A stretch of DNA of 64,000 bases, from contig NC_091995.1 in assembly GCF_044704955.1 (NCBI RefSeq), positions 17,546,001 to 17,610,000 of the forward strand, given 5' to 3'. Under the pieces are notes generated by a model. The model searched no databases, was not told the origin of the DNA, and was given only the letters and a program-made list of their open reading frames with translations. Position 1 is the first letter of the stretch. Each line of letters opens with the position of its first letter. This DNA is from Pristiophorus japonicus. Lineage: Eukaryota. A program made the translations under genes and the position numbers. Below are positions 1,242-63,474 of this stretch, piece after piece.

Positions 1242-1387
1242 TTACCTCCTCTGACGGAAGCAGATAGCGACGATGATTCCAAAAGCTGCAAGTAAAGCTA
1301 TCACTACTGCTCGAACACGCCAGAGAATCCAGACATCGGTGAAGATGCTTATAGTATCTTCGGTGCTCGTTTCCTTACGTTCGTCAC
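1242..1387 (-). CDS. NCR3: NKp30/NCR3-like receptor gene A, exon 3 (stalk + TM with Arg + short tail)
   Basis: Acceptor atttcatag, phase 1. Translates SDERKETSTEDTISIFTDVWILWRVRAVVIALLAAFGIIVAICFRQRR, followed by TAA (1244-1242). Alternatively it splices at AG|gtaatt (1246) to a possible exon starting at 702 that adds MQTH-stop. Confidence 0.8.
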
Positions 1388-3005: not shown

Positions 3006-3132
3006 CTTGGGCTGTTTATAATAACCAGGTTAAGGCGTGGCTCAGCAATGTCACCAACAACGCGGTGAGGATTCGTAGGCTAACGCCGGCAAGAGTAGCT
3101 TTTAGGCTATAAATGTTAAATAACAAACTTAC

Positions 3133-23830: not shown

Positions 23831-24249
23831 ATTCCACTGGTCAAGTGGGCAGAGCAGTGGCAAATGGAATATATTTCAGAGAAGTGTGAGGTGATGCAAT
23901 TTGGGAGGACTAATAAGGAAACTGTATACACAATAAGCGGTTGGCCACTTAATAGTGTAGATGAACAAAGGGACATTGGAGTGCTTGTCCACAGAACTCT
24001 TTCGGGAGGAAACTGAAACATTAATTCTTAAATCGTGTCCCTCCGATCTGGGGGGCAAACCAAACACTTACAAGGCACCTTTTTTTGGTGTTTTTAAAAT
24101 TTTTTTTGTGTTTTTGTTTTTTTTAAAAGTTTTTTGGGGCACTAAAATCATATATATATATTTTTCCTCCAAGTGCCCCCTATAAAAGCGGAGGGGGACA
24201 CTAAAAACACCGGCAATTAAAACAAATTAAACTTTAAAACATAAAACCA

Positions 24250-28144: not shown

Positions 28145-28174
28145 GACAAAAGCATAGTGCAACCTCTACCTAAC

Positions 28175-30260: not shown

Positions 30261-32540
30261 GGGGTCCCTTTAAGGGCTATACCCACCCCAAAGTCACAGG
30301 CCTTAATGGTCTTTAATTGGCCTCGTTGGTGTTTTGAGCAGAGGGAGCTCTTAACGGGGCACACCTCTCCCCTAGTTAACGAATGGGGAGGGGTCTTGCT
30401 CCCTCTGCTCAGTTGTCTTAATTTAACTTTAATTTAAGGAGGAAAGGGGCTCTGAGAGAGAGAGCGGAGAGACAGAGAGAGTGACAGAGAGAGTGAGAGG
30501 GGGTGGGAAAGAGGGAAGCTACGAGGGCAGGTCTCCCCTCACAGCAATGGGTGGGCGTTTTTCTGGGGTGCACTCCCCAGATGATGGAAAAAAAAACAAG
30601 ACACATTCCTTGTAGATGGTCTTCGGGTGGGGGGAGAAGATGTCTTCACCTGGGGCAGCTGGAGCCACCTAGGCACACACTCCCAACGATGTTAAATAGG
30701 GTGATTAGTAATACTTCAGCCAGGTAGCTCCAGCTATCCCAGGCTAGGCAATGGGGGAGGGGTGCTTCAGTGGTGTGTGGTGCCTAGCTGTAAGCAAGAC
30801 CCCCACACACACTTCCACACATACACACCCCCCGCAATGTTCCGGCCCTCTAGCAAGTCTTCTTTCCTCCCCCCACTGATACAACAAAGTCTTTAGGGGA
30901 ATGCACCAAAACACACCCACCTTTGCTTGATGAAGTTTCTCCCTCCTTCCACACTGTTAGTTGTTCTTTTTTTCCCCCTCTCTCCAACTCTCTGCAGCAG
31001 TATTAAAGGTTGTTGAGTTTTCTGCTCTCCTCCTCTCCCTTTGGATGAATTGGAATGTAGAAAGCCCCCTCCTCCTCTTCCTGGGCTGTTTCACAGGGCT
31101 CACTTCAGGCTTTCCAGACAGGAGCTTCAGCAGCAAGCTCCTTCTCTCACCACAGCACAGCCCCAACTGAATAGGCCACGCCTCCAAAGCTCCACCATTG
31201 GTCCACAGATTTCCTGAATGTAGCAGGCCAGGTGGATAAGGTGTTTAAGAAGGCATACGGAATGCTTGCCTTTATTGGCCAAGGCATAGAATATAAGTGC
31301 AGGGAGGTTATGCTTAAATTTTATGCTACTTTGGTTAGGCCACTGTTGGAGTACTGTGTGCAGTTCTGGTCACCGTATTATAGGAAGGACATGAATGCAC
31401 TAGAGAGGGTGAAGACGAGATTTTCTAGGATGCTGCCTGGCATGGACAATCTTAGTTATCAGTACAGATTGGATTGACTGGGTTGGTTCTCATTGGAACA
31501 GAGGAGGTTGAGAGGAGACCTCATTGAGGTGTACAAAATATTGAGGGGCCTGGACATAGTGGATATTAAGGGTCTATTTCCATTGCTGGGGGGTTCTGTT
31601 ACGAGGGGCCATCATTTTTAGGTGGTTGATAGAAAGTTTAGAGAGGATTTAAGAGGGGGGTGGGGGTGTTCTTTATGCAGAGGGTTGTTGGGATCTGGAA
31701 CACGCTGCCTGGAACAGTGTTGGATGCAGAAACCCTCACCACTTTTAAAAGATGGTTGGATGGGCACTTAAAGTGCCGTAACCTGCAGGGTTACGAACCT
31801 AGAGCTGGTAATTGCGATTGGACTGGATGACCTTTTGTTGACCGGTGCAGATATAATGGTAAGTACTGCAGGGAATCGAATACGGCCAGGATGATCTCCT
31901 GGACTAGGTTCGATTGCCTGAATGGTCGGAGAGGAATTTTCCCAGATTTGTTTCCCCCGAAATAGGTCTGGGCTTTTATCTGGTTTTGGTCTCTCCCAGG
32001 AGATCACATGGCTCCGTTTGGGTTGGAATGTAAAATGTTTCAGTATAAGGGGTGTCGCAATTATATGAGGCGGACTGGTTGGGCTGGGTGCTTTTTGCCT
32101 TTCCGTCATTGTTCATAGGTTTATATGTGACCTTCAGGGCAGCTGACCAAGGGCCGTGCGGCTCTTTGTCGGCCGGCATGGACATGATGGGCCGAAATGA
32201 CCTCCTTCTGAGCTGTAAATTTCTATGTTTCCACGTTTGTACGAGGGGGTTTCCTTATGAAGCTAGGTTGAGTAGATTGGGCCTATAGCCATTGGAGTTC
32301 AGAAGAATGAGAGGTGATCTGATTGAAACTTATAAGATAATAAGAGGGCTCGACATGGTGAATGCAGAGAGGATATTTCCACACATAGGGGAAATTAAAA
32401 CTAGGGGACATAGTCTTAGCATAAAGGTCCGCCCATTTTAAACAATGATAAGGAGGAATTCCTTCTCTTGAAGCGTTGTAAATCTTTGAAACTCTGTGCC
32501 CCAGAGAGCTGTGGAGGGGCTGGGTCATTGAATATATTTA

Positions 32541-45200: not shown

Positions 45201-48200
45201 TCTTTTTTTTACTGGGGGCATCCAAAAATCAGATTATTCATTCTACCAGTCGGACTTTATTACTGTGGGAGGTCAATGCTGTTTCTGATCTTTCAATGGT
45301 TTGCAGCCATGTTTTCTTCAACACCATGGATTTTATTGACATTTTGGAAAGATAAAATATGGCCCAAATCAATAATATCTTATGTTTAATGGGTCGCTAT
45401 CTGTGATAGTAAGATGCTGGGTACAATCTGTGATCAAGATACTATTTCGAGCACGAAGATTGAACAGCATTATGTTTTATTGATCTGTTGAATCATCATT
45501 GAAACTTTCAACAAACTCTTATGCTTAAGCACCGCGATGTACTTTGCCAGTGATATCGTTGCAATCACCCTGAAACAGGTTTGATGGGTGAGATAGTTTG
45601 CAGGAGTCATGCAAAGTAGCATGATATTTACACTTTAGTCTCGTGGCCCCGTTTACACTGAATTCCTCACTGCAGTCCCTTCCTTATGCAGGTCCTATAT
45701 TTCATGTTGTTTTCTTCTTCACTGTTGCATATGCTTTACATGTACTTTCATTCTGTTTATGTTCAAGTAATAACAACATATTATAAACTTTACCATAGAC
45801 CGAAATGAAGGAAAATGTGTTAAAAATGATCAACGAATCTATCAAAACTGAATAAACGACAGACGGCAGAGTTCTTACCAAACATTTGACATGAGTACAC
45901 AAGAGCTTGAAAGTTAACATAAGGTATAATTTTGCCTATACACTATAATAAGCCAAATTGAAATCTTATTTATAAAGAATCGTTTCGCTTTTAATTACAC
46001 ATAACGCTCCCCAGGTGTTATTTTTTCATCCAAACCCTTAAACCTTTCTATCAAATGTCTGTGCCACCTTCTTTAGGGAGGCATAGTATCTATATCTTAA
46101 ATTGGTTTAAAAACATCTCCGTTGAAAGGATATCATACCAAATGCTTTTAAGTGTTGGGACATAAGAACATAAGAAATAGGAGCAGGAGTAGACCATTTT
46201 GCCCCTCGAGCCTGCTCCACGATTTAATAAGATAAGCTCATCTGATATTGCATTCAGCTGCACTTTCCTGCCCGCTCCCCATATCCCTTCACTCCCTCAT
46301 CATTCAAAAATATGTCCATCTCCAACTTCAATATATTCAATGACCCAGCCTCCACAGCTACCTGGGGCAGAGAATTCCACAGATATACGACCCTATGAGA
46401 GAAGACATTCCTCCTCATCTCTGTTCTAAATGGGCAACATCTTACTCTTAAACTATGCACCCTAGTTCTAGATTCCCCCTTCAGTAACAATGTATAATTC
46501 CAAGGCTTATAACTGGAAATATAAGTATGGTTTACATTTTCTCTTTATTAATTCAAAGGAAAACATGCAGCCAAGTATTAATTCATAAAGCAGAGTACAT
46601 TATTAAGGAAGAAGGAGCAGGACGTTTGGAAAAGCATAATATAGTCAAGCAGAATCAGCATGGTTTTATGAAAGGGAAATCATGTTTGACAAATTTGCTG
46701 GAGCTCTTTGAGGATGTAACGGACATTGTGGATAAAGGGAAACCAGTGCATGTGGGGTATTTGGATTTTCAGAAGGCATTCGATAAGGTACCACATAAAA
46801 GGTTACTTCACAAGATAAAAGCTCACGAGCTTGGGGGTAATTTATTAGCATGGATAGCGGACTGATTAACTAACAGAAAACAGAGAAACGGGATAAGTGG
46901 GGCATTTTCCAGTTGGCAACCGGTAACTAGTGGGAACACAGGGTTCGAGGCTGGGCCTCAAATTTTACAGTCTATATTAATGACGTGAATGAATGAACCG
47001 AGTGTAATGTAGCCAAGTTCGTTGATGAAAAAAGTTGGGTGGAAAAGCAAGTTGCGCGGAGGACAAAACGAATCTACAAAGGGATATAGACAGGCTAAGT
47101 GAGTGGGCAAACATTTGACAGCTGTAATTAAATGTGGGAAATGTGAGGTTATCCACTTTGGCAGAAAATATAGAAACACAAAGTCTTATTTAAATGGAGA
47201 GAGATTACAACATGCTGCAGTAAGGAGGGACTTGGGATTATTGTGCATGAAACATAAAAAGTTACTATGCAGGTACAGCAAGTAATCAGGAAGACAAATT
47301 GAATGTTGGCCTTTATTGCAAGGAGGATGGAGTATAAAAACAGAAGTATTGCTGCAACTGTATAGGGTATTGGTGAGGCCACACCAAGAGCAATGCATAG
47401 TTTTGGTCTCCTTATTTAAGGATGGATATAATTGCATTGGAGGCAGTTCAAAGTAGGTTCACTAGGTTGATTCCTGAGATGAGGGGGTTGACGTATGAAG
47501 AAAGGTTGAGTAGGTTGGGCCTATACTCATTGGAATCTAGAAGAATGAGAGGCGTTCTTATTGAAACATATAATATACTGAGCGGGTAGATGCAGAGAGG
47601 ATATTTCCACTCGAAGGGGAATCTAGAACTAGGGGACATAGTTTAAGAATAGGGGGTTACCCATATAGAACTGAGATGAGGAAGAATTTCTTCTCTCAGA
47701 GGATCGTAAAAATGTGGAACACTCTGCCCCAGAGAGCAGTGGAGGCTGGCTCATTCAATATATGTAAGTTGGAAATAGACAGATTTTTGAATGATACGTG
47801 AGTCAAGGTTATGGGGAGTGGGCAGGGAAGTGGAACTGAGCCCAAGATCAGATCAGGCTTGATGTTATAGAATGGCAGAGCAGGATCGAGGTGCCGAATG
47901 GCCTATTTCTGCTCCTTCTTTGCTATGTTCCTATCTTCCTATTTTCCATCCGGAGTAGCACGTGAAATTTCCTGGCCATCCAATCACAGCACAAGTATTA
48001 TTGCCTTTGAGAAAGATAACAGAGGCAAAGAAGAAAGTTGCAGTGTGGGTTGAAATGGTGCATGGGCAGTGTTGCATGAGTTAAATGCTGTTAACTGCTG
48101 TTAAACGCTGCGCCCGCTATTCCACTCTAGTGACTTCAATGGAACAGAATATCGATGGTACAGTACCACGGTCAGCAAATGAGTTTCTGTCTTTTTGGCA

Positions 48201-49326
48201 TCTCCACCAATGACCAATTTCATCCCCAAGCTGACCGGCGGTCAGAAATTAGGTAGCAAAAAGTGGCTTATGACAAATCTAAGGTTCATAATAAGAGTCG
48301 AAAACCAGGCTGAATGTAAAAAGTAGAGAGGAGACCCAGAACAGGAATAAGAACATAAGAACATTAAAAAATGCGAGCTGCAGTAGGCCATTTGGCCCCT
48401 CGAGCCTGCTCCCCATTCAATAAGATCATGGCTGATCTGATCAGTGACTCAGCTCCACTTCCATGCCTGCTCCCCATAATCCTTTTTTCCCTTATCACTC
48501 AAAAATCTGTCTAACTCTGCCTTAAACATATTCAATGACCCAGCCTCCACAGCTCTCTGGGGCAGAAAATACCACTGATTTACAACCCTCTGAGAGAAGA
48601 AATTCTTCCTCATTTCAGTTTAAAATGAGTGGCCCTTTATTCTGAGACTATGCCCTATGAGTGGAAATAACTTCTCTGCATCCACCTTGTCGAGACCCCT
48701 CATTATCTTATATGTTTCGATAAGATCACCTCTCATCCCTCTGAACACCAATGAGTACAGGCCCAACTTACTGAACATATCTTCATAGGTCAACCACCTC
48801 ATTTCTGTAATCAACCTAGTGAACCCTCGCTGAACTTCATCCAATGCAAGTATACCCTACCTTAAATACGGAGACCAAAACTGAATGCAGTACTTTAGGT
48901 GCCGCCTCAACAATAACCTGCACAGTGGTAGCAGGACTTCTCTGCTTTTAAACTCCATCGTCCTTGCAATAAAGGACAACATTCCATTTGCCTTACTGAT
49001 TACTTAATGTACCTGCATACTAAAGTTTTGTGTTTCATACACAAGTACCCCCAGGTCCCTCTGATTTGCAGCATTTTGCAATTTTTCTCCGTTTAAATTT
49101 CTATTTTTTCTGCCAAAGTGCATAACCTCACATTTTTCCACACTATACTCCAGAGGGGCAAAGAGAGAGAGGGAGAGAGAATATTAGAACATATGAGCGG
49201 CTAAAATAAAAGGGAACTCAAAAATATTTTATGAACATATACATAGTAAAAGTGTAGTCAAGGATGGGTGCGGCCGATTAGGGACCAAAAGGAAAATATT
49301 CTTGTTCTGGCAGAGGTATCACTGAG

Positions 49327-49558
49327 GGAGGTGGGTGGAGTGGCTTGACCCATCCACCTCCACGGAGGTGTGTGGGGGGCCTGACCCATCCACCTCCATG
49401 GCACGAACCTGGTATTGCAGTACTTCCAGGAACGGTGCAGTGGCTCTCGGCCTTTTGGCTAAGAGCATTGGCGCAGAGTGATCCTTGATGTGTGCAAGGT
49501 GACCTCTGGCGTTTGTGATTTGACAAAGAATTGGAAAGATTGGCAACGAAAAAAAAAA
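49327..49558 (+). mobile_element. Poly(A)-tailed insert built from rearranged U2 snRNA segments (SINEU-like candidate)
   Basis: ACCTGGTATTGCAGTACTTCCAGGAACGGTGCA (49407-49439) corresponds to the U2 3' stem-loop IV. TCTCGGCCTTTTGGCTAAGA (49445-49464) corresponds to the U2 5' end. A10 tail; sits inside a CR1 fragment. Confidence 0.7.
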
Positions 49559-51302
49559 GAATACTTTGCATCTGTCTTCACTGGAGAAGAGGATGCTGCT
49601 AATGTAGCAGCAAAGGAGGAAGTAGTGGTGATATTGGATAGGATATAAATATTTTAAGAGGGGGTACTTAAAAGTTAGGCAGTCCTCAAAGCCAAGTGGT
49701 CCAGGTGGAATGCATCTTAGTTTCCTGAGGGAATTAAGGATGGAAATTGCAGAGGCTTTGGCCACAATCTTCCAAGCCTCGTTAGATATGGGGATGGTTC
49801 CAGGGGACTGGTGGATGGCAGATGTTACACCACAGTTTACAAAAACGGGACAGGAATAAATTTGGTGACTACAGACTAGTGAGCCTGATTTCCAGAAGGT
49901 GCCACATAAGATGTTACTGCACAAGATAAAAGCTCACGGGGTTGGGGGTAATATATTAGCATGGATAGAGGATTGGCTAACTAACAGAAAACAGAGAGTC
50001 GGGATAAATGGTCATTTTCAGGTTCGCAAACTGTAAATAATGGGGTGCCGCAGGGATCGGTGCTGGATCCTCAACTATTTACAATCTATATTCATGACTT
50101 GGATGAAGGGACCAAATGTAATGTAGCCAGGTTTGCTGATGATACAAGATGTGTGAGAAAGCAGATTTTGAGAAGGACATAAAAAATCTGCAAAGGGATA
50201 TAGACAGGCTAAGTGAGTGGGCAAGAATTTGGCAGATAGAGTATAATGTGGGAAAATGTGAGTTTTTCCGCTTTGGCAGAAATAATAGAACAGCAAATTA
50301 TAATTTAAGTGGAAAAACATTGCAAAGTTCTGCAGTACCGAAAGACCTGGGGGTGCTTGTGCATGGAACAAAAAAAGTTATTATGCAGGTTTAGCAAGTA
50401 ATCAGGAAGGTAAATGGAATGTTGGCCTTTATTGCAAGGGAGATAGAGTACAAAAGCAGAGAAGTCCTGCTACAACTGTACAGGGTATTGGTGAGGCCAC
50501 ACCTGGAGTACTGCGTGCAATTTTGGCCTTCGTATTTAAGGAAGGATATACTTGCATCGGAGGCTGTTCAGAGAATGTTTACTAGGTTGAATCCGGAGAT
50601 GAGGGGGTTGACTTATGAGGATAGGTTCAGCAGATTGGGCCTATACATATTGGAGCTCAGAAGAATGAGAGGTGATCTTATTGAAATTGATAAGAAAATG
50701 AGGGGACTCGGCAAGGTGGATGCAGAGAGAATATTTCCACTCATAGGGTAAACTAAAACAAGGGACATAGTTTTAGAATAAGGGACTGCCCATTTAAAAC
50801 TGAGATAAGGAGACATTTCTTCTCTCAGAAGCTTGTAAATCTATGGAATTCTCTGTCCCACAGAGCTGCGGAGGCCGAGTTATTGAATATATTTAAGGCG
50901 GAGATAGACAGATTTTTGAGTGATAATGGTTATGGGGAGCAGGCATGGAAGGAGAGCTGAGTCCATGATCAGATCAGCCATGATGTTATTGAATGGCGGA
51001 GCAGGCTCGAGGGGCTAAATGGCCTACTTCTGCTCTTATTTCTTATGTTCTTAAGTTCTTATGAGCCTAACTTCGGTGGTGGAGAAACGTTTAGCAAAAA
51101 TAAAATGGGTCAAACCTTTACTGGCATTCGGACACGTGTGGGCTAATAAATGAAAGTCAGCACAGTTTTGTTAAAGATAAATCCTGATTGACTAACTTGA
51201 TTGAATTATTTGATGAAGTAATGGAGCGGGTTGATGTTGAGTAGTTTGATTGAAGTGCAGATGGACTTTGAAAAGGCGTTTGACAAAGTGTCACATAATA
51301 GA

Positions 51303-51866: not shown

Positions 51867-54542
51867 ACATAATAGACTTGTAAGCACAATTAAAGATCAT
51901 GGGATTAAAGGAGCAGTAGGGATGAAATTGGCCAAGGCACAGCAAGCAGAGAGTAGTGGTGAACGGTAGGTTTTCAGACTGGAGGGAAGTGTGCAGTGGT
52001 GCTCTCCAACAGTCGGTATTGGGAACCCTGTTCTTTGATATATATTCATGACCTGAATTTCTGCAAACAGGACATAATTTCAAAGGTTGCAGTTGAAATA
52101 AAACTCGGAAATTAAATAAATAATAAGCAGAAAACTTCAGGAGGACATAGACATACTGGTAAAATGTGTAGACACATGGCAGATGCAAATTAACGTAGAG
52201 AAGTCTGAAGTGATACATTTTGGTAGAAAGAATGGCAGAGGCCATTATAAACTAATATAAACTAAATTATAACGTTTTAAAGGCAGTGCAGGAACAGGGA
52301 GACGCAGGCTTGTATGGACACACATCTTTGAAGGTGGCAGAACAAGTTGAGAATGGTGTTAACAAGTCTAATGGAACACTTGGCTTTTTTAAGAGGAAAA
52401 ACATTACAAAATCAAGGCGGTTGAGCTGAAGCTTTGTGAAACATTGGTTAAGGCTCACCTAGAGTGTTGTGTTCAATTCTGGGCACGATACTTTAAGAAG
52501 AATTCAAGGTCTTAGAGAGGGTGCAGAAGAGATTTGCTAGAATGGGACCAGGTCTGAAGGACTTCAGTTATGTGGACAGACTGGAGAAGCTGGGTTGGTT
52601 CTCACTAGAGCAGAGAACGTTAAGAGATTTGTTAGAGGTGTTTAAAATCATGAACGATTTTAGTGTAAATAAGGAGAACTTGTTTCAGTGACAGAAGGGT
52701 CGGTAACCAGAGGTCACGGATGTTAGTCGAATACCAAAAGAACCAGAGGTGACATGAGGAAACACTTTTTTTCACAGTGAGTTATTGTGCTCTGGAATGG
52801 AAAGGCAGTAACCCTCAAGGGAATTGGATAAATACTTGAAGGGTAAAACGAAAAACTATGGGGAACGAGCAGGGTGAGAGGGTTGATTGGATAGCTCTAC
52901 CAAGCAGTTGGCACAATCACAATTGGCCGAATGGTCCCCTTCTGTGCTGTGTCATTCTATGGTTCGATGATTTATATTTCTTAATGATAAAACCTCCCCC
53001 ATGCCTCAAATACATTTGTCCATTGAATAGGGGATTGGCACAGAACACCAAGCAAGTAACACCAGTGGAGTTCTGCTAGTGTTGGGGAGAGGTGGATCAA
53101 TGCCACTGAGTTAGAGATGGAGCAGTAGCTAGATTCTTTTTATTCATTGGATCTTCATCGTCCATATAATTGAAATTGCATGTGTGTGGTACTCTGCTGC
53201 ATATAGCATAGAATGGTTACAGCACAGAAAATGAGGCCATTTGGACAACTGAACCAGTGCCAGTTCTCTGCAAGAGCACTTCAGCTAGTCCCAATCCCCC
53301 TACCCTTTTCCCATAAGCCTGTATTTTTTCCCTTCAGGTACTTATCCAATTCCCTTTTGAAAGCCACGATTGAATCTGCCTCTGCCACCCTCTCAGGCAG
53401 TACATTCCAGTTTATGACCACACCCTACGTAAAAAACATTTTCCTCATGTAGCTTTTTGCCAATCACCTTAAATCTGTGTCCTCTGATTCTCGACCGTTC
53501 TGACAATGGGAACAGTTTCTCTCTGTCTACTCTGTTGAGACCCCTCATGATTTGGAATGTCAAATCTCCTCAACCTTCTCTGCTCCAAGGAGAACAACCC
53601 CAGCTTCTCCAGTCGACCCACGTAGCTGAAGTGCCTTATTTCCGGAACCATTCTTGTAAATATTTTCTGCACTCTCTCTATGGTTGTCACATCTTTCCTA
53701 AATTACGAAGCCCAGAATTGGACACAATACACTAGGTGAGGCCGAATCTTTATAAAGGTTCATCATAACTTCATTGCCTTTGTACTCTATAGAGGAGAAA
53801 TTCAGGGCATTTGCACCTCCTGTTCGTGGGGCGTAAACGACATTTCACCCGGGTATGGTGCTGCTAGCGACTCCCGCATAATTCCAGAAGTGAAGGGTGG
53901 AGAGTTGAGTTATTTGCCCAAATTCGGCCCAGCAAATGCCCGCGAAGTTCTTAGGACTGATAAATGCAGATGTAAAGTCTGCTTTTATCAGTGTAAGACT
54001 TTTAAAGGACAGAAAACATTTTTTTTCAATAACTTCAACATTTCAACATCTATTAAATCAGGTACGTTTATTTTAGACCCTTTAAAATATCTACATTTGT
54101 TTTTCAATGTTAAAAAAATAATTAAATGCCATTTTGATTAATTTTAAATATGTGACTTTTTTTTGCATTTTTTTTAAGTGTTTGCGTATTTTTTTTGAGC
54201 TCACCAGAAGCATGAATGAGGATCCTCCTACGTGGATTGCTTGGGCCGGCCTACGTGATCCCAGTGATGTGTGCGAAGCGCTTATGTTTTTGGGATATGT
54301 GGGCCTCTCCCAGGCCTTCACGTAGAGGCCCAGCACCAGACGTCTCCTGATCTCCGGGGCCACCCTGGAAATTCGTTGAAATCTATCAGGTCGGAGGCAT
54401 TCACTGGCGGGAAGCCTCCAATCGCAATTTCTGAGCCAATATTGAGTTCAAATGTGGCATTTTTCACTCTGAGGCACATTTTGCTTTTACCTCACATACG
54501 TGTGTGTGCCCAAAACCATGATTCATTGACAGTAAACACATT

Positions 54543-54628
54543 CTATGCCCGAATTTCAGTAACTGTGAGGTTACCTACCACATCGTTAGAATCAATCCCA
54601 CGGACTGAGCCAACCATATATATAATAT
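54543..54628 (-). CDS. Gene B candidate last coding exon (DIIYMVGSVRGIDSNDVVGNLTVTEIRA-stop)
   Basis: Strong acceptor ttctctttgttttcag, phase 1, open to TAG at 54545-54543. An internal donor (G|gtaggt at 54579) could extend the gene further. Confidence 0.45.
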
Positions 54629-55093: not shown

Positions 55094-55255
55094 CACGTGG
55101 GTGGATATCGTCGTATGCCTCGTCATCACTGAACCACAAAGGGAGGAAGAAGCAAATGGTTACCTTTTTAAAGCATTCGGCGCAGGTCAGAGAAACATAA
55201 AGGCAGCAAAATGTCACAGAGAGACCTACGCACCATTGCAGGGGTAGAGAGACGT
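55094..55255 (-). CDS. Gene B cytoplasmic module 5: micro-exons 55255-55234 (22 nt) and 55128-55094 (35 nt), DVSLPLQCDDEAYDDIHPR
   Basis: ttttgtgtttccacag|...|gtgcgt and ccctttgtggttcag|...|gtaagg; phases 1-2 and 2-1. Confidence 0.75.
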
Positions 55256-55717
55256 CTGTGGAAACACAAAAGGAACAAACAGGAAAATCGTAACTCTGTT
55301 ATATCTGAAACAATATTTAGTACAGCTGCATTTTAAACCGCGTCTCAGTTGTGCTTATCATCTGTGTATAATAATTAATGCACGTTTATCTGCGGCCAGT
55401 GGGAGTGGGAAGGGTTATGTCGGCTCCCATACCATTATGGGAACCAGTCTAATTCAAACGCAAAATACAGGCTGAGCGCGCCCTTGCTCACTGTCTAGAA
55501 TGGCAAAGTTTAGGACCGTTCCAGTGAGCGTAGTTGAACTGAATATAATGAAGCATTAAACCGATCACGTGTAGCTGATCCAACAGATCAAAAGCGAAGT
55601 CATACTAATCAAAATAAATTACTCTTCAGAGATTATGGCTAAAGTATAGCATTAATATGGAGCACGGGCACTCAGCACTCTAGACGGGCGCTGTAATAGC
55701 GCTCCAACTAAGGTTGT

Positions 55718-55896
55718 TGCTGATATTTTAAACAATGGCCGGGCGGGAAACCCGCGAATCCGGGTGGGACACCGGTTTTACACCCCGATATTCCCTTCCA
55801 TTGACTTCAATGGTGAGTAAATCCCTGCGGGTGTACAACCGGTTTTGCACTCGATCTCATCAGTTTCCCGACGGCCGGTTAGGTTAAAGTTGCCCC
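55718..55896. repeat. Imperfect palindromic MITE-like element
   Basis: Centre CCATTGA-CT-TCAATGG (55798-55813); arms accggttttacaccc/gggtgtacaaccggt and ggccgggcgggaaac/gtttcccgacggcc. Confidence 0.5.
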
Positions 55897-55949
55897 GGGT
55901 CCAAGAACATAAGGGCAAGAATATTACTTCTGCAACAAGTGACAGTCGG

Positions 55950-57225
55950 CGTGCAGTTCTGGTCACCACATTATAGGAACATGTAATTGCATCAGTAAAG
56001 GTACCGGGGAGATTTACGAGGACGTTGTATTGACTGGAGAATTTTAGCTAAGAGGAAAGATTGGATAGGTTGGGATGGCTTGCATTGGAACCGATGGAGC
56101 ACAGAGGAGACCTAATTGAGATATATAAAATTATGAGGGCCGTAGATAGAGTGGGTAGGAAGAACCTGTTTCCCTTAGCAAAGTGATCAAATATCAGGGG
56201 GCACAGATTTAAAGTAATTGGGGGAATGTTTAGAGGGAACTTGATGAGAGTTTTTTCACCCAGAGGGTGGTGGGTGTCTGGAATACACTGGCTGAAAGGG
56301 TGGTAGAGGCAGAAACTCACATAGCATTTAAAAAGTACTTGGATATGCACTTGAAGTGCAATAACGTACAAAGCGACGATCAAGAGCTGGAAAATGGGAT
56401 TAGGCTGGATAGCTCTTTGTCGGCCGACACAGACACAATGGGCAGAAGGTCTCCTTCTGTGCTGTAAATGTCTATGATTCTGTGAGCCTAACTACCTCCT
56501 CATGACATTTAACGGCCTTACCATCGTCATCCTGGGGGAGGTGAGGGAGGGGTGGTGCGGGTGTGGGGGTGGGGGCGTGGGGGCGGGCACCAGTGACCAG
56601 ACACTTAACTGGACCAGCCACATAAATACTGTGGCTGCAAGCTCAGAGCAGAGGCTGGTATTCTGCAAAGAAAATCTCATTTCCTCACTCCCCAAACCTT
56701 TTCCATCATCTAAAAGACACAAGTCAGGAGTGTCATGGAATGAAGCTCCAGCACACGCAAGCAGCTTGACACCTTCCAGGACAAAGCAGCCCGTTGGATT
56801 GGCACTCCATCCGCCACCTTAAACATTCACTCCCTCCACCACTGGCCCACCGTGGCTGCAGTGTGTACCATCGACAAGATGCACTGCAGCAACTTGCCAA
56901 GGCTTCTACAGCAGCACCTAGCAAACCCGTGAACTCTACCACATAGAAGGACAAGGGCAGCAGGCGCAAGGGAACACCGTCAACTGCAAATTCCCCTCCA
57001 AGGCACACGCCATCCTCATTTGGAAATATATCGGCCATTCCTTCATCGGCGCTCGTTCAAAATCCTGGAACTCCCTCCCTAACAGCACCGTGACCAGAAG
57101 ACCTTCACCAGAAGGACTGCAGTGGTTCAGGAAGGTGGCTCACCACCACCTTCCCAAGGTTAATTAGGGATGGGCAGTAAATGCTAGCCTTGCCAGCAAC
57201 ACCCACATCTCAGGAACTAAAAAAA
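55950..57225 (+). mobile_element. CR1 3' fragment (~55950-56480) and a second LINE 3' end (~56590-57225) in a gene B intron
   Basis: The second fragment is an uninterrupted homologue of the sequence split by the solo LTR and the ERV (8336-8414 + 16045-16295). Confidence 0.7.
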
Positions 57226-57344
57226 ATAGCAAGCAGCAAGCTGCTGAGGTTGTTCCTGAGCAATTCACACAAGTATAATACTGAGGCCTCAGTGAAACTT
57301 GTCAATTTGAAAATTTAAGTGAATCTTTAATCGGCGGTGCTCAC

Positions 57345-57502
57345 CATCTACATTAGTTTCATCGTGAGGCAGCTCATTCCTTCGGAACAACAGACAAATA
57401 AGAGAAAATTAGTTACTAAACTAACTACAGAACAATTAGAATAAAAGTTGATGAAAAGTTTAACTCTGAGATTCACCGACCTTCCAAATTGTGGAGGAAC
57501 AT
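57345..57502 (-). CDS. Gene B cytoplasmic module 4: micro-exons 57502-57481 (22 nt) and 57379-57345 (35 nt), DVPPQFGRNELPHDETNVD
   Basis: ttttacctttgcag|...|gtcggt and tgttgttccgaag|...|gtgagc; phases 1-2 and 2-1. Confidence 0.7.
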
Positions 57503-58304
57503 CTGCAAAGGTAAAAGTTAACAATGAAAGATTTGCAGCTTTGATGCAACCTGTCTAAAGACACATTGACTACAGGAAACTGTTTCCCATGTCGGGCAGG
57601 TCAGTAGACAAAGGACACAGATTTAAAATAATTGGCAAAAAAACCAGAGGGGAGTTGAGGAGATTTTTTTATGCGGTGATATGGAAAGCACTACCTGAGA
57701 GAATGGGAAAAGCAGGTTCCCTTTCCGTCCCCCACCCAGATCTTCTCTCTCTACCATATTCTCTCCCTCAGCTCCTCGATGCTCCTGTCGCGATATTCCC
57801 TCCTCCCACCGCCCCCCCCGCCATGCTCCAAACCCGAACTTCTCCTCCACACTGGCCCCCCCCCACCCGATGCTCCTGGCTCGACTTTCTCTCCCTCGCC
57901 TCCTCGATGCTCCAGCCCCGTTGCTTCCCTCCCTCCTCCCCAATCCTCGTCTGGCCACTGATGACCCTCCCCCCTCCCCCGCCTTGCATGCAGCTGATCC
58001 TCCCCCATCCCCATCTCCCTGCAATGTAGTGCTACAACCTCTCCATCTGGCTGGCTGCGGGTAGGGAGTCAAAAGTTTGAAATGCAAATCAGGCCCTACC
58101 AGCAAGACCTGCGGGAAACCTGTTCCCCGGGTTTCTCAACCGCTTCCAAGCAACCGTCCTACCAACCAGCCTCCCGATTAAAATTCCTGCCATCGTATCA
58201 CGCAATCACTAGCCCCAATGATACCAGTTATTTCAGCATGTGTCACTGATCCAAACACAGGCCCCCGTTGGTACTCGTGACTCAGTAGTACGTGCATGTT
58301 TTGT

Positions 58305-58700
58305 TATCATTCTATCACGGGATGTGGGCATTGCTGGCGAGGGCTGTATTTATTGCCATCCAAATTGCCTTCGAGAAGATGGTAGTGAGCCGCCTTCTTG
58401 AACCACAGAGGACAATTAAGAATCAACGAACAGTGCGTGGGTCTGGAGTCACATGTAGGACAGACCAAGTAAGGAACACAGATTTCGTACCCTAAATGAC
58501 ATCTGTGAATCAGATGTTTTTTTTTAACAGCAATCCGGTTGATTCATGGTCAGCATTACTGAAACTAGCTTTTTAATTCCAGACTTATTTAATTAATGAC
58601 ATTTAAATTCCCCAGCTGCCATGGTGGGATTTTGAAAACTCATGTCCCCAGATCATTCGACCTCTGGATTACTAGTCCAGTAACATAAGCACGATGCTAC
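58305..58700 (-). mobile_element. tRNA-derived SINE (second family)
   Basis: Matches 737-1130 (gggtctggagtcaca..., ggattactagtccagtaacat). Confidence 0.6.
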
Positions 58701-58723
58701 CATGCTCCATATGCTTCACTCAC

Positions 58724-58886
58724 CAGCTGGATTAATTTCATCATAGGTCGAAAAAGTGCTCTCCATCCAGGATCTGAGAAAGAAGAAAAGAAAATCACAT
58801 AGCTATTGAAAAAAAAAATCCAGCTAATTAAAAAAAGATTCACCCTCTATGACCACCAACCAACCTTTGAGCTTGCGGACCTAACT
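58724..58886 (-). CDS. Gene B cytoplasmic module 3: micro-exons 58886-58865 (22 nt) and 58773-58724 (50 nt), ELGPQAQRSWMESTFSTYDEINPA
   Basis: ttttgttcccacag|...|gttggt and ttcttctttctcag|...|gtgagt; phases 1-2 and 2-1. Confidence 0.75.
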
Positions 58887-59110
58887 CTGTGGGAACAAAA
58901 GTCAAAAATTAAGGTTTATCCATGGATGCAAACAAAGCAATTGATTCTGTGAAATAAGATTCAAATTACATGTGCCTCTTATATGCATCCAGCAACAGTA
59001 ATCAGTTAACCTACTTAAGCCATTTACTAAAAATAATTGGTAATTAAAAAAATAATGCTTAAAAGACTTTTAAAATATTGACCAGTTAAATACATGTAAC
59101 TAATACTCAC

Positions 59111-59284
59111 CATTAAAATTAATATTATTGCAAGGCGCAATATTGCTTTGGGATTAAAGCAAAAAAGAAAAAAAGGTTTCAGTGGATTGAATATCAATAT
59201 GTATATCAAGTGAATAAAAGATCAAGAGAAGTGTAATCTTCACTTTGATATTCACTGACCATTGTAACCGTGCTGGTCCGCAGG
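59111..59284 (-). CDS. Gene B cytoplasmic module 2: micro-exons 59284-59260 (25 nt) and 59145-59111 (35 nt), PCGPARLQCNIAPCNNINFN
   Basis: ttttattcccgcag|...|gtcagt and polyT..cccaaag|...|gtgagt; phases 1-2 and 2-1; open frame. Confidence 0.68.
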
Positions 59285-59669
59285 CTGCGGGAATAAAAGG
59301 TGATATAGGAAGTGTTACAACTTTAGTATGGGTGTACGGTAGCATAATGGTTATAACAACGTAAGAAATAGGAGCAGGGTTAGGCCAACCGGCCCGTCGG
59401 GTCTGCTCTGCCATTCAACAAGATCATGGCTGATCTTCTATCTCAGATCCTCCTTCCCGCCCGATCTCCATATATTGTGATTCCCCATGAGTCCAAAAAT
59501 CTATCCCTCGCTATCTTGAATATACTCAACAACTGAGCATCCACAGCCCTCCGGGGTAGAGAACTCCAAAGATTCACAACCATCGGAGTGAGGAAATTTC
59601 TCCTCAACTCAGTCCTAAATGAGACTGTGATCCCTAGTTGTAGACTCACCAGGTTGTGAAAACTGTTAT

Positions 59670-60150
59670 GTTACTGGACATAAAGCAGAGGCCTGGAGCA
59701 ATGATCTACAAATATGAGCTCAAATCCCACCACGGCAGCTGCTGTGAAATTTAAATTCTGTTAATTTAAATAAATCTGGAATAAAAACTAGTATCAGCAA
59801 TGGTGACTATGAAACGATCGGATTTTAGTAAAAACTGGTCTGGTTCACTAATGTCCTTCAGGGAAGGAAACATAGAAACATAGAAACATAGAAAATAGGT
59901 GCAGGAGTAGGCCATTCGGCCCTTCTAGCCTGCACCGCCATTCAATGAGTTCATGGCTGAACATGCAACTTCAGTACCCCATTCCTGCTTTCTCACCATA
60001 CCCCTTGATTCCCCTTCACCTGGTCTGGCCTATACGTGACTCCAGACCCACAGCAATGTGGTTGACTCTTAATGGCTCTCTGAAATGGCCTAGCAAGCCA
60101 CCGCCAAGGTGACTCACCATCATCTCCTCGAAGGCAATTAGGGATGGGAA
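59670..60150 (+). mobile_element. tRNA-derived SINE (second family) interrupted by a short CR1 3' end (~59868-60013)
   Basis: Opposite-strand match to 737-1130, with a (AAACATAG)n tail inside. Confidence 0.55.
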
Positions 60151-60622
60151 ATGAATGAATAAAAAATAAATACACTTCTCTTATTGAAAGTCAAACATTA
60201 CAACCACAGTCCGGCCAAGATCAACTAATATTTTCAACGGAACGCTAACGGTATCGTTTATATAATAAATCGACTCAATTCCTAGCCACTTACAAATACC
60301 TAGTAGTAATTATAATTATTTAGTATAATCTCTGTACATAAAATGCAAACAGCTCACTGCAACTAGCGAATGTAAAAATAGTAATCTAAGAATTGCTGTT
60401 AATGATATTTACGGAGGGACCTAGCCGCATAATGGAATATGGAATTATTCGGATTATATTTTGAAAATGTGAATTGATTCATCCATTAACAAGGCGGGAA
60501 TGCTAAATATCACACCAACCCGCTTAAGGTTCATTTCCAAATGTAACCCAGATTATTTCCGAACTTTTTCATGCAAAACGTGTTTGTCGTGGAAAAGAGT
60601 GCAATTTGAATAAGTCACTTAC

Positions 60623-60775
60623 GAGCTAAAGGAATGTCATCATAAATTCGATCATTCATTCTAAATCACAAAGCAAAAGGGCACATTATCGAACAGTAGA
60701 AAAACATTTATACATAATTTTTCAATACAAAATTTGGGGGGAGATTTACTAACCTCCGAAATTGTAGGCGAACAA
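60623..60775 (-). CDS. Gene B cytoplasmic module 1: micro-exons 60775-60754 (22 nt) and 60660-60623 (38 nt), VVRLQFRRMNDRIYDDIPLA
   Basis: gatttctacag|...|gttagt and gtgatttag|...|gtaagt; phases 1-2 and 2-1; reading frame continuous from the TM exon. Confidence 0.75.
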
Positions 60776-61132: not shown

Positions 61133-61249
61133 CTTTTGTCAGACCGTAACCCGCGGAGAACATGAGGAAAACGGCTAAAGCTCCAGAAATGGTATACATT
61201 GATGCGAAGCTGATGGACGACTCGTCGGATTTCTCTGCGATCGGTTTTG
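61133..61249 (-). CDS. Gene B stalk + TM exon (PKPIAEKSDESSISFASMYTISGALAVFLMFSAGYGLTK)
   Basis: Acceptor ttttgtcttctgcccag, donor G|gtacat, 117 nt, phase 1-1. Hydrophobic stretch with no charged residue in its core. Confidence 0.82.
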
Positions 61250-61599
61250 CTGGGCAGAAGACAAAATAAGAGATTAGTTTCACTCAGAACACCACTTGCT
61301 AACTCCCGCTATCCATTGCGGGGGAATGTATACTGTGCCCCAAAACCAACCATGTAATTTCAATGGCGATGAGAACTACAGATGCAGTCGTGCTGGTTTT
61401 ATCCATCTCCCCTACATTTGGTGATTGGGCTTGTGATATTAGTTATTTATCTTTTTTTATTTTAACGGCTTTTTTTTCTTCAAATTAATTAAAGTAAATT
61501 GTTATCGAAAATATATCATGACAAAACTTTTAACGAATATAATATCGTGATTGAATTAGCTGTTCTCAGTATTCTTTGCATTGTATGTGTCAGAGCGCA

Positions 61600-62297
61600 T
61601 GTATATGTGTTAATGTAGGCATGTGTGTGAGTGTGTGTATGTTTGTGTCTGTGTGTTTAGCCCTGTGTGTATCTGTATGTGTCTATGTGCGTGTGTTTGT
61701 GTCTGTATGCCTGTGTGTGTCTATATCTGTGTGTATACATCTGTGTGTGTTTGTGTGTGTTTGTCTATGTGTGTCTGTTTATGTGNNNNNNNNNNNNNNN
61801 NNNNNNNNNNNNNNNNNNNNNNNNNNNNNNNNNNNNNNNNNNNNNNNNNNNNNNNNNNNNNNNNNNNNNNNNNNNNNNNNNNNNNNNNNNNNNNNNNNNN
61901 NNNNNNNNNNNNNNNNNNNNNNNNNNNNNATTTATGTGTATCTGTGCATGCGTATATGTGTTTATGTGTATATGTGTGTGTGTGGATATGTGCGTGTGTA
62001 TGTGCGTGTGTATGTGCATGTGTATGTGCATGTGTTTGTGGATGTGTGTGTGTATAAATGTGTTTGTGTATGTGTGTATGTATACATGTATGAGTGTTTG
62101 TTTGTGTGTGTGTATGTGTATATGTGTGTGTATGTGTGTGTTTGTGTGTGTATCTGTGCGTGTGTAGATGTGTGTGTATGTGTGTTTGTGTGTGTGTGGG
62201 TATGTATGTGGGTGTGTATTTATGCGTGTATGTGTCTGATTATAGGGTGTTATTCTATGGCTGTGTATGTGTTTGTGTGTGTGTGTCTGCATGTGTG
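61600..62297. repeat. Degenerate (TG)n microsatellite spanning an assembly gap (N 61786-61929) in the gene B V-TM intron
   Basis: Seen directly; the overlapping CVCV/HTHT ORFs are artefacts. Confidence 0.95.
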
Positions 62298-62804
62298 AGT
62301 TTGTGCAAACTATCATAACTTTTTAATAAACGTTTTGGTGATAAAGTGGCGATAGTTATCAAACACAAAGGGATACATGCTTATAACCCATGCATTCGGA
62401 CATCGAAATGGATATAATAACAGAAAATGCTGGATTTACTCAGCAGATCAGGCGGCATCTGTCGAGAGAGAAACAAAGTTATCGTTTCAGGTCGATGCCT
62501 TTTCCTCAGTATTGGGAAAAAAATTAGAGATGTAACAGATTATAAGTAGGTGCGGTGGGCATTAATCTGGGGACGGAGGAAAGAAGAAAAGGGAAGGCCT
62601 GTGATAGGCAGGGTTGATTATATGACAGAAGGTATGATAGGACAACGTAAAAGTCATAGAAATAGAATGTTATCCTCATTTTCACTAGGTTGACATATGT
62701 TCTGTACGTGTAAGACCCTGCAAGTTGAGTCTGCTGTGATATAATAACGGATCGACCGACCCAGGGGTTATGGTGGAACAGTTTGTAATAAACAGTCAAC
62801 TCAC

Positions 62805-63140
62805 GCACTACATTTAGCGTTGTTCCTTGTCCGTACGTTTCGGCCACTTCCATTAGTTCCACTTTGCAGTAGTAGTTTCCTGAATCATACTGTCTCACGT
62901 CTTTGATAGTAATGGAAGCGTCCCTCCTTTGCGTGAAATCCTCGGCACTTGCCCGCGATAGACGCCCGCTGAATTCCGTGGTTTTGTCGCTGACTTCAGG
63001 TCCACCTTTAAAGTTTTTGTGCCAATTGAAATTACCGACCCCCGGAGGCCCTTCATGCGTGCAGTTCAGGAGCACCGACTGCCCCTCCGTGGCGTTAATG
63101 GACGGGATTTGAATTACTTTGATGTTGGCTGCAGCAATTC
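62805..63140 (-). CDS. NCR3: NKp30/NCR3-like receptor gene B, V-type Ig domain exon
   Basis: Lies within ORF 62524..63171: IAAANIKVIQIPSINATEGQSVLLNCTHEG...W...GPEVSDKTTEFSGRL...DSGNYYCKVELMEVAETYGQGTTLNVV. Acceptor ctattgacag, donor gtgagt, 336 nt, phase 1-1. About half of residues are identical to the gene A V domain by eye. The leader exon was not found and is probably beyond 64000. Confidence 0.9.
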
Positions 63141-63474
63141 CTGTCAATAGATGATGATTTGTGATTAGCAAGACGCACCGAGTACTAACTTCATCTTAAC
63201 CAAGCGCTGAAGATGAGGGAGGCCTCCAGTAAAGAGGCCTATCCGGGCAGCCAGTGGTGAAGGGACATTCAAAATGCAGCAACCTTGAACCCGCTGGGTG
63301 TGTTTTTCCAAGGCACCGCGCCACAGTTGGGGCCTGATTAGCAGCGGAGGGATTACGAGACCACGGGTGCACAGACTGCCATTTCCCATCAATTAACTTT
63401 AGCCGTTTTCCCACAACCCGTCCCGCTGCTGGGGTGCTGGCGTGGGACATCGGCAAATAAACTGGGTTGGTTAC

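What the first reader, a model, noticed from the sequence alone, without database searches (positions are those of the whole stretch)
55094..60775. Receptor tail encoded by five tandem two-micro-exon cassettes, each a Tyr-motif unit
Seen in sequence: downstream of the gene B TM exon are five pairs of tiny exons (22+38, 25+35, 22+50, 22+35, 22+35 nt). All have canonical AG/GT sites, the two exons of a pair are separated by a 91-114 nt intron, and every pair has phases 1-2/2-1. Pair totals are 60, 60, 72, 57 and 57 nt, so each can be skipped without frameshift. Spliced, they read VVRLQFRRMNDRIYDDIPLA-PCGPARLQCNIAPCNNINFN-ELGPQAQRSWMESTFSTYDEINPA-DVPPQFGRNELPHDETNVD-DVSLPLQCDDEAYDDIHPR with no stop. 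None of this appears as a coherent protein in the ORF track. Established: mammalian NKp30 has a short tail and signals through adaptors, and pY-D-D/E-V/I motifs dock SLP-76/Nck-type SH2 domains (e.g. CD6 YDDI, ADAP YDDV). STYDEI also fits the ITIM-like S-x-Y-x-x-I pattern. Inference: this is an NKp30-family receptor that signals through its own tail, built by cassette duplication and potentially tunable by alternative splicing.
Basis: partly seen in the sequence, partly recalled or inferred. Interest (0 to 1): 0.88.

Follow-up and report, generated by a model that had tools for sequence, protein, structure and literature searches.

The report
Shark NKp30-like receptor tail of duplicated mini-exons
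A shark immune-receptor gene related to NKp30 encodes its long intracellular tail on twelve tiny exons, ten of which are five old copies of a two-exon unit. The layout is real and shared with horn shark, but how the tail signals is untested.

Summary
On the minus strand, after a V-set exon (63140-62805) and an uncharged TM exon (61249-61133), lie ten exons of 22/38, 25/35, 22/50, 22/35 and 22/35 nt. All have AG/GT sites, inner introns of 93-114 nt, phases 1-2/2-1 and an open frame.

- **Homology:** the five pairs are homologous. Ungapped identity is 0.47 (a exons) and 0.57 (b exons) against a null of 0.25.
- **Cross-species support:** each pair matches, one to one and in order, a segment of the horn shark RefSeq protein "NCR3-like". 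That protein is the only other one found with this tail.
- **Corrections:**
  - The tail does not end at 55094. Exon 11 (54628-54579) and a terminal exon (45752-45702) follow.
  - The terminal exon ends in a Y-A-T-V-K motif resembling the ITIM exon of paralogues.
  - Only three of the five cassettes carry Tyr here. Only YDDI (cassette 1), S-x-YDEI (cassette 3) and the C-terminal Tyr are conserved.
- **Alternative splicing:** none of the nine horn shark protein models skips a cassette.
- **Leader caveat:** the only ATG is one base out of frame with the leader, so this copy may be defective or mis-assembled.
- **Missing evidence:** no RNA data could be obtained.

This is a new variant of known kinds (shark NCR3 family, small-exon tails). 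Signalling direction is unresolved.

The parts
63141..63194 (-). Leader-like segment with the only nearby ATG (63194-63192), which is one base out of frame with the leader/V frame
   Evidence: The V frame upstream of the V exon resembles the horn shark signal peptide but has a stop at 63198-63196 and no in-frame ATG. No alternative leader exon was found up to 64000.
62805..63140 (-). V-set (VJ-type) Ig exon, 336 nt, phase 1-1
   Evidence: Pfam V-set 5e-11. The best PDB matches are human NKp30 entries 3NOI, 6YJP, 9FWW and 3PV6. It is 61-67% identical to horn shark NCR3-like.
61133..61249 (-). Stalk and transmembrane exon, 117 nt, phase 1-1, with no charged residue in the membrane span
   Evidence: It is 18/38 identical to the horn shark TM segment.
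60754..60775 (-). Cassette 1, exon a (22 nt)
   Evidence: AG acceptor, GTTAGT donor.
60623..60660 (-). Cassette 1, exon b (38 nt), carries YDDI
   Evidence: It is 10/12 identical to horn shark.
59260..59284 (-). Cassette 2, exon a (25 nt)
59111..59145 (-). Cassette 2, exon b (35 nt), no Tyr in either species
   Evidence: It is 8/11 identical to horn shark.
58865..58886 (-). Cassette 3, exon a (22 nt)
58724..58773 (-). Cassette 3, exon b (50 nt), carries S-x-Y-D-E-I, conserved in horn shark
57481..57502 (-). Cassette 4, exon a (22 nt)
57345..57379 (-). Cassette 4, exon b (35 nt). It has His where horn shark has Tyr.
55234..55255 (-). Cassette 5, exon a (22 nt)
55094..55128 (-). Cassette 5, exon b (35 nt), carries YDDI here. 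Horn shark has His at this position.
54579..54628 (-).
   Evidence: AG acceptor, GTAGGT donor. It aligns 9/20 columns with the corresponding horn shark segment.
45702..45752 (-). Terminal coding exon with the stop codon. It ends in a Y-A-T-V-K-K-K-T-T motif. Candidate AATAAA signals lie about 220 and 365 nt downstream of the stop.
   Evidence: It is 10/16 identical to the end of horn shark isoform X4. It resembles the C-terminal ITIM exon of paralogues.

Best explanation
**What it is.** These are the real cytoplasmic-tail exons of a shark NKp30-like (NCR3-family) type I receptor on the minus strand. The gene reads: leader/V exon, uncharged TM exon, five ancient tandem copies of a two-exon unit, exon 11, and a terminal exon about 8.8 kb further on.

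**The repeating unit.** Exon a (22-25 nt) encodes a Pro-rich linker. Exon b (35-50 nt) encodes an acidic (Y/H)-D-(D/E)-I core.

**The tail.** It is 135 aa. The terminal exon ends in a Y-A-T-V-K motif that resembles the family's C-terminal ITIM exon. The five-copy array predates the split from the horn shark gene.

**Shown:** the exon anatomy, the homology between cassettes, and collinearity with horn shark protein models.

**Inferred mechanism.** The membrane span has no charged residue and so cannot pair with CD3zeta/FcRgamma-type adaptors. The receptor would therefore signal through its own tail:
1. Clustering by ligand lets a Src-family kinase phosphorylate the conserved tyrosines (YDDI in cassette 1, S-x-YDEI in cassette 3, Y-[AS]-T-V at the C-terminus).
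2. These then dock SH2 proteins.

I lean slightly to pYD(D/E)[IV]-class partners (Src-family, SLP-76, Nck) over SHP phosphatases, but the sign of signalling is unresolved.

**Confidence by layer:** architecture about 0.9, phosphotyrosine-docking function about 0.55, activating-type partners about 0.35.
For: - **Exon anatomy and open frame:**
- **Excess over background:**
- **Cassette homology:**
- **Collinearity with horn shark:** the region from stalk to stop aligns with horn shark isoform X4 at 93/179 identity, with exon 11 and the terminal exon included.
- **One-to-one cassette orthology:** diagonal scores are 45-59, off-diagonal scores are at most 31.
- **Junctions confirmed by isoforms:** horn shark isoforms differ exactly at the predicted junctions. 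These are V/TM, TM/1a, 1a/1b, 1b/2a, after 5b and after exon 11.
- **Conservation pattern:** conservation is concentrated in the b exons of cassettes 1-3 and in the C-terminus.
- **NKp30 relationship:** the V domain is closest to human NKp30.
- **Mammalian contrast:** mammalian NKp30 couples to CD3zeta through a TM charge (PMC12272517).
- **Motif precedent:** the pYDDV and pYDDI peptides of ADAP pull down SLP-76, Nck, PLCgamma, p85, Crk, Gads and RasGAP (PMC2908683).
- **Family context:** paralogues with uncharged TM carry canonical ITIMs, including V-L-Y-A-T-V-K.
Against: - No transcript evidence was obtained for this species.
- The horn shark models are automated RefSeq predictions, and I could not inspect their support.
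- The ATG at 63194 is out of frame with the leader. This copy may be a young pseudogene or carry an assembly indel.
- Tyr is not conserved in cassettes 4 and 5 and is absent from cassette 2.
- No binding or phosphorylation data exist.
- YxxI/V also fits generic sorting signals.
- The S-x-Y-x-x-I motif and the ITIM-derived end argue for inhibition rather than activation.
Confidence: 0.72

Rival explanations
1. Inhibitory receptor. The tail recruits SHP-1/SHP-2/SHIP through the conserved S-x-Y-D-E-I of cassette 3 and the C-terminal Y-A-T-V. This would make it the inhibitory partner of short-tailed, TM-charged neighbours in a paired-receptor cluster.
For: - The TM is uncharged and the tail is long.
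- S-x-Y-x-x-I is conserved in both species.
- The terminal exon resembles the V-L-Y-A-T-V-K ITIM exon of paralogues P0018 and P0012.
- An earlier scan note reports a neighbouring chain with TM Lys and almost no tail (unchecked).
Against: - Asp at +1 is unusual for SHP SH2 ligands (my knowledge of the consensus, not tested).
- Position -2 of the C-terminal motif is Lys here and Glu in horn shark, not I/V/L/S.
- Cassettes 1 and 5 do not fit the ITIM pattern.
Confidence: 0.3
2. In this genome the gene is a recently inactivated copy, or its 5' end is mis-assembled. The tail architecture is then ancestral and real, but is not used here.
For: - The only ATG (63194-63192) is one base out of frame with the leader-like sequence.
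- The V frame has an upstream stop and no Met.
- The hydrophobic core of the leader is interrupted by polar residues.
- The family shows decayed copies. The horn shark paralogue P0014 is truncated and has Phe in place of Tyr. An earlier scan note also reports decay nearby.
Against: - The V, TM and all twelve tail exons keep open frames and good splice sites.
- A single-base assembly indel, or a leader exon beyond the window end, would explain the defect equally well.
Confidence: 0.25
3. The Y-x-x-I/V motifs act mainly as tyrosine-based sorting or endocytosis signals (AP-2 type) and acidic clusters. They would control surface level rather than dock SH2 proteins.
For: - YDDI, YDEI and YATV all fit Y-x-x-hydrophobic.
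- The tail is acidic, with 15 Asp and 7 Glu in 135 residues.
Against: - The pattern is generic.
- Conservation extends well beyond four residues, for example an identical run around the cassette 1 and cassette 3 motifs.
- Family members carry bona fide ITIM patterns.
Confidence: 0.12
4. The exons are chance AG...GT-bounded open segments and are not spliced into mRNA.
For: No RNA evidence was obtained for this species.
Against: - Five hits fall in 5.7 kb, against about 0.2 expected.
- The cassettes are homologous.
- They are collinear with horn shark protein models, exon by exon.
Confidence: 0.02

Closest known systems
Heterodontus francisci "natural cytotoxicity triggering receptor 3-like" / "SIRP beta-2-like" isoforms X1-X8 (XP_067865360 to XP_067865368), plus XP_067865369, an N-terminally truncated "uncharacterized protein" model of the same tail
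   Same: - The order is the same: V, uncharged TM, five tail units, exon-11 segment, and the K-K-K-T-T end of isoform X4.
- V is 61-67% identical and stalk-to-stop is 52% identical.
- YDDI, YDEI and the C-terminal Tyr are conserved.
   Different: - It is a different species or paralogue.
- Tyr is present in unit 4 and absent from unit 5, the reverse of the window.
- Most isoforms use another 3' exon that looks repeat-derived.
- These are automated models that have never been described in a paper that I could find.
Human NKp30 (NCR3)
   Same: - Single VJ-type V-set ectodomain.
- It is the best structural-sequence match.
- Tail variation arises by alternative splicing at the 3' end (PMC6514059).
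   Different: - Human NKp30 has a charged TM that pairs with CD3zeta/FcRgamma.
- Its short tail is encoded in exon 4 (PMC12272517, PMC6514059).
- Here the TM is uncharged and a 135-aa tail is spread over 12 exons.
Shark NCR3 family with ITIM tails (nurse shark NCR3 P0017; horn shark P0018; catshark P0012 first half). The window's gene A belongs to this type.
   Same: - Same V family, 46-50% identity.
- Uncharged TM.
- A C-terminal Y-A-T-V-K exon.
   Different: Those tails are short and carry canonical V-Q-Y-A-T-L and V-L-Y-A-T-V ITIMs. They have no YD(D/E)I cassettes.
Chicken MHC BG genes (butyrophilin relatives)
   Same: One V exon, one TM exon, then a tail built from many tandemly duplicated tiny exons and a 3' exon. 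The number of tiny exons differs between BG genes (PMC4046983).
   Different: - BG exons are single 21/24-nt heptads that form a coiled coil.
- Here the unit is a pair (22-25 nt plus 35-50 nt) that shifts phase 1-2-1 and encodes an acidic Tyr motif.
ITAM two-exon units (TCR zeta with three ITAMs; the extra ITAM of Xenopus FcRgamma)
   Same: A signalling tyrosine module encoded on two small exons and multiplied by exon duplication (PMC4536121).
   Different: - In ITAMs the exon border splits the first Y-x-x-L.
- Each ITAM unit has two Tyr spaced by about 7 residues.
- Here the Tyr core lies wholly in exon b, and conserved Tyr are more than 40 residues apart.
ADAP YDDV / YDDI docking motifs
   Same: The Y-D-D-I/V core is the same. 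In T cells these phosphopeptides bind SLP-76, Nck, PLCgamma, p85, Crk, Gads and RasGAP (PMC2908683).
   Different: - ADAP is a cytosolic adaptor, not a receptor.
- The resemblance is a four-residue motif only, and no homology is claimed.

Membership tests
NKp30 / NCR3 family | Single V-set domain of VJ type (J-like G-x-G-T-x-L-x-V at its end) encoded by one exon | tested here: met
   Pfam V-set 5e-11. The exon 63140-62805 is phase 1-1 and ends in the Y-G-Q-G-T-T-L-N-V motif.
NKp30 / NCR3 family | Closest known relatives are NKp30 proteins | tested here: met
   The top four PDB sequences are human NKp30, E 5.7e-13 to 7.5e-13, ahead of antibody light chains. It is 50% identical to nurse shark NCR3 P0017. 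The horn shark counterpart is named NCR3-like.
NKp30 / NCR3 family | Charged TM residue for CD3zeta/FcRgamma coupling, with a short tail (mammalian type) | tested here: not met
   The TM exon translation has no Arg, Lys, Asp or Glu in the hydrophobic span, and the tail is 135 aa. The mammalian feature is taken from PMC12272517.
NKp30 / NCR3 family | MHC linkage and binding of a B7H6-type ligand | not testable with these tools
   The window holds no MHC marker that I identified.
ITIM-bearing inhibitory IgSF receptors | At least one (S/I/V/L)-x-Y-x-x-(I/V/L) in the tail, with an uncharged TM | tested here: inconclusive
   One conserved match, S-x-Y-D-E-I in cassette 3. The C-terminal Y-A-T-V has Lys (window) or Glu (horn shark) at -2. 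Cassettes 1 and 5 do not fit the pattern.
ITIM-bearing inhibitory IgSF receptors | Recruitment of SHP-1/SHP-2/SHIP after phosphorylation | not testable with these tools
   This needs biochemistry.
ITAM-bearing signalling chains | Y-x-x-(L/I), 6-8 residues, Y-x-x-(L/I), with the exon border splitting the first module | tested here: not met
   Tyr lie at tail positions 14, 58, 96, 106 and 127. The only close pair (96/106) ends in Y-M-V-G, and both of those Tyr are absent from horn shark. The exon borders do not split the Tyr modules (rule from PMC4536121).
BG/butyrophilin-type small-exon tails | Tail of tandem 21/24-nt exons, each one heptad of a coiled coil | tested here: not met
   The exons are 22-25 and 35-50 nt in alternating phases. 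The sequence is Pro- and Asp-rich, not heptad-like. The overall gene layout is similar (PMC4046983).

The most novel reading that the evidence does not exclude
The cassette array is a previously undescribed, adaptor-independent signalling module of an early-vertebrate NKp30 lineage. It would be a multivalent pYD(D/E)I scaffold that recruits SLP-76/Nck/Src-class SH2 proteins directly. Output would be tuned over evolutionary time by Tyr/His toggling in individual cassettes, as seen between this gene and horn shark, rather than by cassette skipping.
Probability: 0.25. Interest if true: 0.6.

Novelty: new variant of a known kind. Interest (0 to 1): 0.45.

Why it matters
NKp30 is the one NK receptor traceable from sharks to humans, and how it signalled before adaptor coupling is open.

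- **Biology.** A conserved, self-contained tail with repeated Y-D-D/E-I units gives a concrete candidate to test.
- **Exon evolution.** The array is a clean example of a phase-symmetric two-exon unit being multiplied to build a signalling tail.
- **Annotation.** Such tails are missed by annotation. The catshark model of the same subtype stops in the intron after the TM exon. A tail search of 1.84 billion representative proteins found only the horn shark gene.

Tried and rejected
- **Horn shark locus.** The horn shark genomic locus, and hence splice-site conservation at DNA level, could not be examined.
- **Joined model.** Searches used the V exon ORF by reference and horn shark proteins by id. 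The joined frame was only translated and aligned locally.
- It was redone from references.
- **Tail homologue searches.**
  - The word-indexed search found only the horn shark gene itself.
  - The full HMMER scan of representatives gave two further hits, both unrelated repetitive proteins.
  - The ESM Atlas gave no usable hit.
- **Possible sixth cassette.** The candidate at 52600-52459 was rejected. It lies in an interspersed repeat and has an in-frame stop in the matching frame.
- **Intron retention.** The short introns of cassettes 1-4 contain stops. Only the 105-nt intron of cassette 5 is open, and that is within chance.
- **Literature.** Kinlein et al. 2021 (shark NCR3 family) and Flajnik et al. 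2012 are not held. I cannot say whether they already describe such tails.
- **Complex prediction.** Complex prediction was not used. No SH2 reference is available, and unphosphorylated peptides would be uninformative.

Full report
**1. Observation**

The gene runs on the minus strand. A V-set exon lies at 63140-62805 (Pfam V-set E 5e-11; sequence). A stalk/TM exon lies at 61249-61133.

- **Splice sites.** Every one has a pyrimidine-rich tract and AG in front and a GT donor behind.
- **Introns.** The inner introns are 93, 114, 91, 101 and 105 nt. The outer ones are 1338, 224, 1221 and 2089 nt.
- **Frame.** With phase 1 inherited from the TM exon the joined frame is open, and the other two frames are full of stops.

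**2. More than chance**

- **Pattern scan.** I scanned both strands for such pairs: a pyrimidine tract, AG, 19-28 nt, GT..G, an 80-130 nt intron, AG, 30-55 nt, GT..G, a sum divisible by three and an open frame.
  - The scan returned all five here.
  - It returned only four other loci in the rest of the window. Three of those lie in a GC-rich LINE element.
  - The scan criteria were fitted to the five cassettes, so this is only a background rate.
- **Cassette homology.** The stronger tests are independent of those criteria.
  - Exon-anchored ungapped identity among cassettes is 0.47 for a exons and 0.57 for b exons.
  - Five random pre-donor segments give 0.25 +/- 0.03.
  - None of 20,000 samples reached the observed value (alignment).

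**3. Cross-species evidence**

A protein search with the V exon ORF found one horn shark (Heterodontus francisci) RefSeq gene. It comprises nine protein models: eight named isoforms plus one N-terminally truncated "uncharacterized protein".

*Collinearity*
- The horn shark tail is collinear with the window's model. Stalk-to-stop identity is 93/179 against isoform X4.
- Each window cassette scores best against the same-numbered horn shark unit. Diagonal scores are 45-59 and off-diagonal scores are at most 31.
- The five-copy array is therefore older than the split of the two genes.

*Junction support*
- The horn shark isoforms differ exactly at the junctions predicted here. The differences are TM-exon skipping, a one-residue variant at 1a/1b, another at 1b/2a, an end after unit 5, and alternative exons after exon 11.
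- I take this as indirect evidence that the micro-exons are spliced. Ab initio prediction of 22-nt exons is unlikely. That step is inference, because I could not see the transcript support.

*Conservation*
- Conservation is uneven. The b exons of cassettes 1-3 score 10/12, 8/11 and 10/16, and the terminal exon 10/16.
- The a exons score only 3/8 to 5/8.

**4. Extension of the model**

- **Exon 11**, 54628-54579. It is 50 nt, runs from phase 1 to phase 0, and has donor GTAGGT.
- **A terminal exon**, 45752-45702, with the stop codon. It lies about 8.8 kb further on, across an intron filled with interspersed repeats.

The tail is 135 aa. The terminal Y-A-T-V-K resembles the C-terminal V-L-Y-A-T-V-K ITIM of paralogous shark receptors (P0018 and P0012). 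The cassettes therefore look like an insertion and expansion between the TM exon and the family's old ITIM exon.

**5. What family**

- **Ectodomain.** The V domain's four best solved-structure matches are human NKp30, ahead of antibody light chains. It is 50% identical to nurse shark NCR3.
- **Neighbour.** A second V exon in the window (gene A, 3457-3122, minus strand) is 66% identical to nurse shark NCR3. The window is therefore part of an NCR3-family cluster.
- **Membrane and tail.** Unlike human NKp30, the membrane span has no charged residue and the tail is long. Human NKp30 uses a TM charge to pair with CD3zeta and has short exon-4-encoded tails (PMC12272517, PMC6514059).
- **Verdict on membership.** Membership holds for the ectodomain. 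The mammalian signalling arrangement is not met.

**6. Tyrosine motifs**

- **Window.** Tyr lie at tail positions 14 (YDDI), 58 (S-x-YDEI), 96 (YDDI), 106 and 127 (YATV).
- **Horn shark.** Tyr lie at positions 14, 61, 80 (T-x-Y-H-D-I) and 133.
- **Shared.** Only cassette 1, cassette 3 and the C-terminal Tyr are present in both.
- **Variable.** Cassette 2 never has Tyr. Cassettes 4 and 5 show reciprocal Tyr/His.
- **Not an ITAM.** The spacing is wrong, and the 96/106 pair ends in Y-M-V-G and is absent from horn shark.
- **Precedent for the core.** The Y-D-D-I/V core matches ADAP motifs whose phosphopeptides bind SLP-76, Nck, PLCgamma, p85, Crk, Gads and RasGAP (PMC2908683).
- **Counter-indication.** S-x-Y-x-x-I and the ITIM-derived end point towards inhibition instead.
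- **Status.** Nothing here tests binding, so the sign of signalling is unresolved.

**7. Alternative splicing**

Pair sums divisible by three make cassette skipping frame-neutral. None of the nine horn shark models skips a cassette. The tuning idea is possible but unsupported.

**8. Caveat on this copy**

The sequence just upstream of the V exon resembles the horn shark signal peptide in the V frame. Three observations cast doubt on it:
- The only ATG (63194-63192) is one base out of frame.
- A stop precedes the leader-like stretch.
- No other leader exon was found up to the window end.

This may be an assembly indel, a leader exon beyond the window, or recent inactivation.

**9. Comparison with known systems and novelty**

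Small-exon tails after a V and a TM exon are known from chicken BG genes, which use 21-nt heptad exons in numbers that differ between genes (PMC4046983). Two-exon tyrosine modules multiplied by duplication are known from ITAM chains (PMC4536121).

The present unit differs from both in exon sizes, phases and motif.

The tail itself was found only in the horn shark gene:
- by a word-indexed search of 5.8 billion proteins;
- by a full HMMER scan of 1.84 billion representatives.

The catshark model of the same subtype ends in the intron after the TM exon.

I could not read Kinlein et al. 2021 on shark NCR3 subtypes, so prior description cannot be excluded.

My verdict is a real, conserved and probably undescribed variant of known kinds, of moderate interest.

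**10. Limits**

- No RNA run was listed.
- The joined spliced model was not submitted to any search tool. It was only translated and aligned locally.

Noticed in passing
window 3122-3457 (-), possibly 1245-1310 (-): A second NCR3-family V exon (gene A). It is 66% identical to nurse shark NCR3 and 65.5% to a horn shark ITIM-tailed paralogue. A TM-like stretch at 1310-1245 may be its TM exon. Its tail would run off the window start.
   Followed up: partly
window 63141-63198 (-): The leader-like sequence of gene B has no in-frame start. The ATG at 63194-63192 is shifted by one base, and a stop at 63198-63196 closes the V frame upstream.
   Followed up: partly
window 24200-30300 (-): The GC-rich block (GC 0.57-0.64) is a LINE-type retrotransposon. 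It has an endonuclease/reverse-transcriptase ORF broken into pieces and an upstream ORF with a CCHC knuckle. It accounts for most chance hits of the exon-pair scan.
   Followed up: partly
window 61576-62316, N run 61786-61929: The intron between the V and TM exons holds a long TG/CA-rich simple repeat interrupted by the 144-N gap. The gap was left untouched.
   Followed up: no
window 52433-52624 (-): The usual 3' coding exon of horn shark isoforms X1-X3 resembles an interspersed-repeat copy here (45% identity, with an in-frame stop). The horn shark exon therefore looks like an exonised repeat. The window gene more likely uses the K-K-K-T-T exon.
   Followed up: partly
window 46160-51060, 59353-59960, 53454-53680, 57576-57641: Several families of interspersed repeats fill the long introns. 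The short intra-cassette introns (91-114 nt) are repeat-free.
   Followed up: partly
P0012 (Scyliorhinus canicula LOC119975537), P0014 (horn shark): The catshark model fuses an A-type and a B-type gene and ends in the intron after the B-type TM exon. The horn shark paralogue P0014 has V joined directly to a cassette-1-like piece, with Phe in place of Tyr. Both suggest mis-annotation or decay in this subfamily.
   Followed up: no
window 55129-55233 (-): The 105-nt intron inside cassette 5 is open in frame, so its retention would not truncate the protein. This is within chance expectation (about 0.2).
   Followed up: yes
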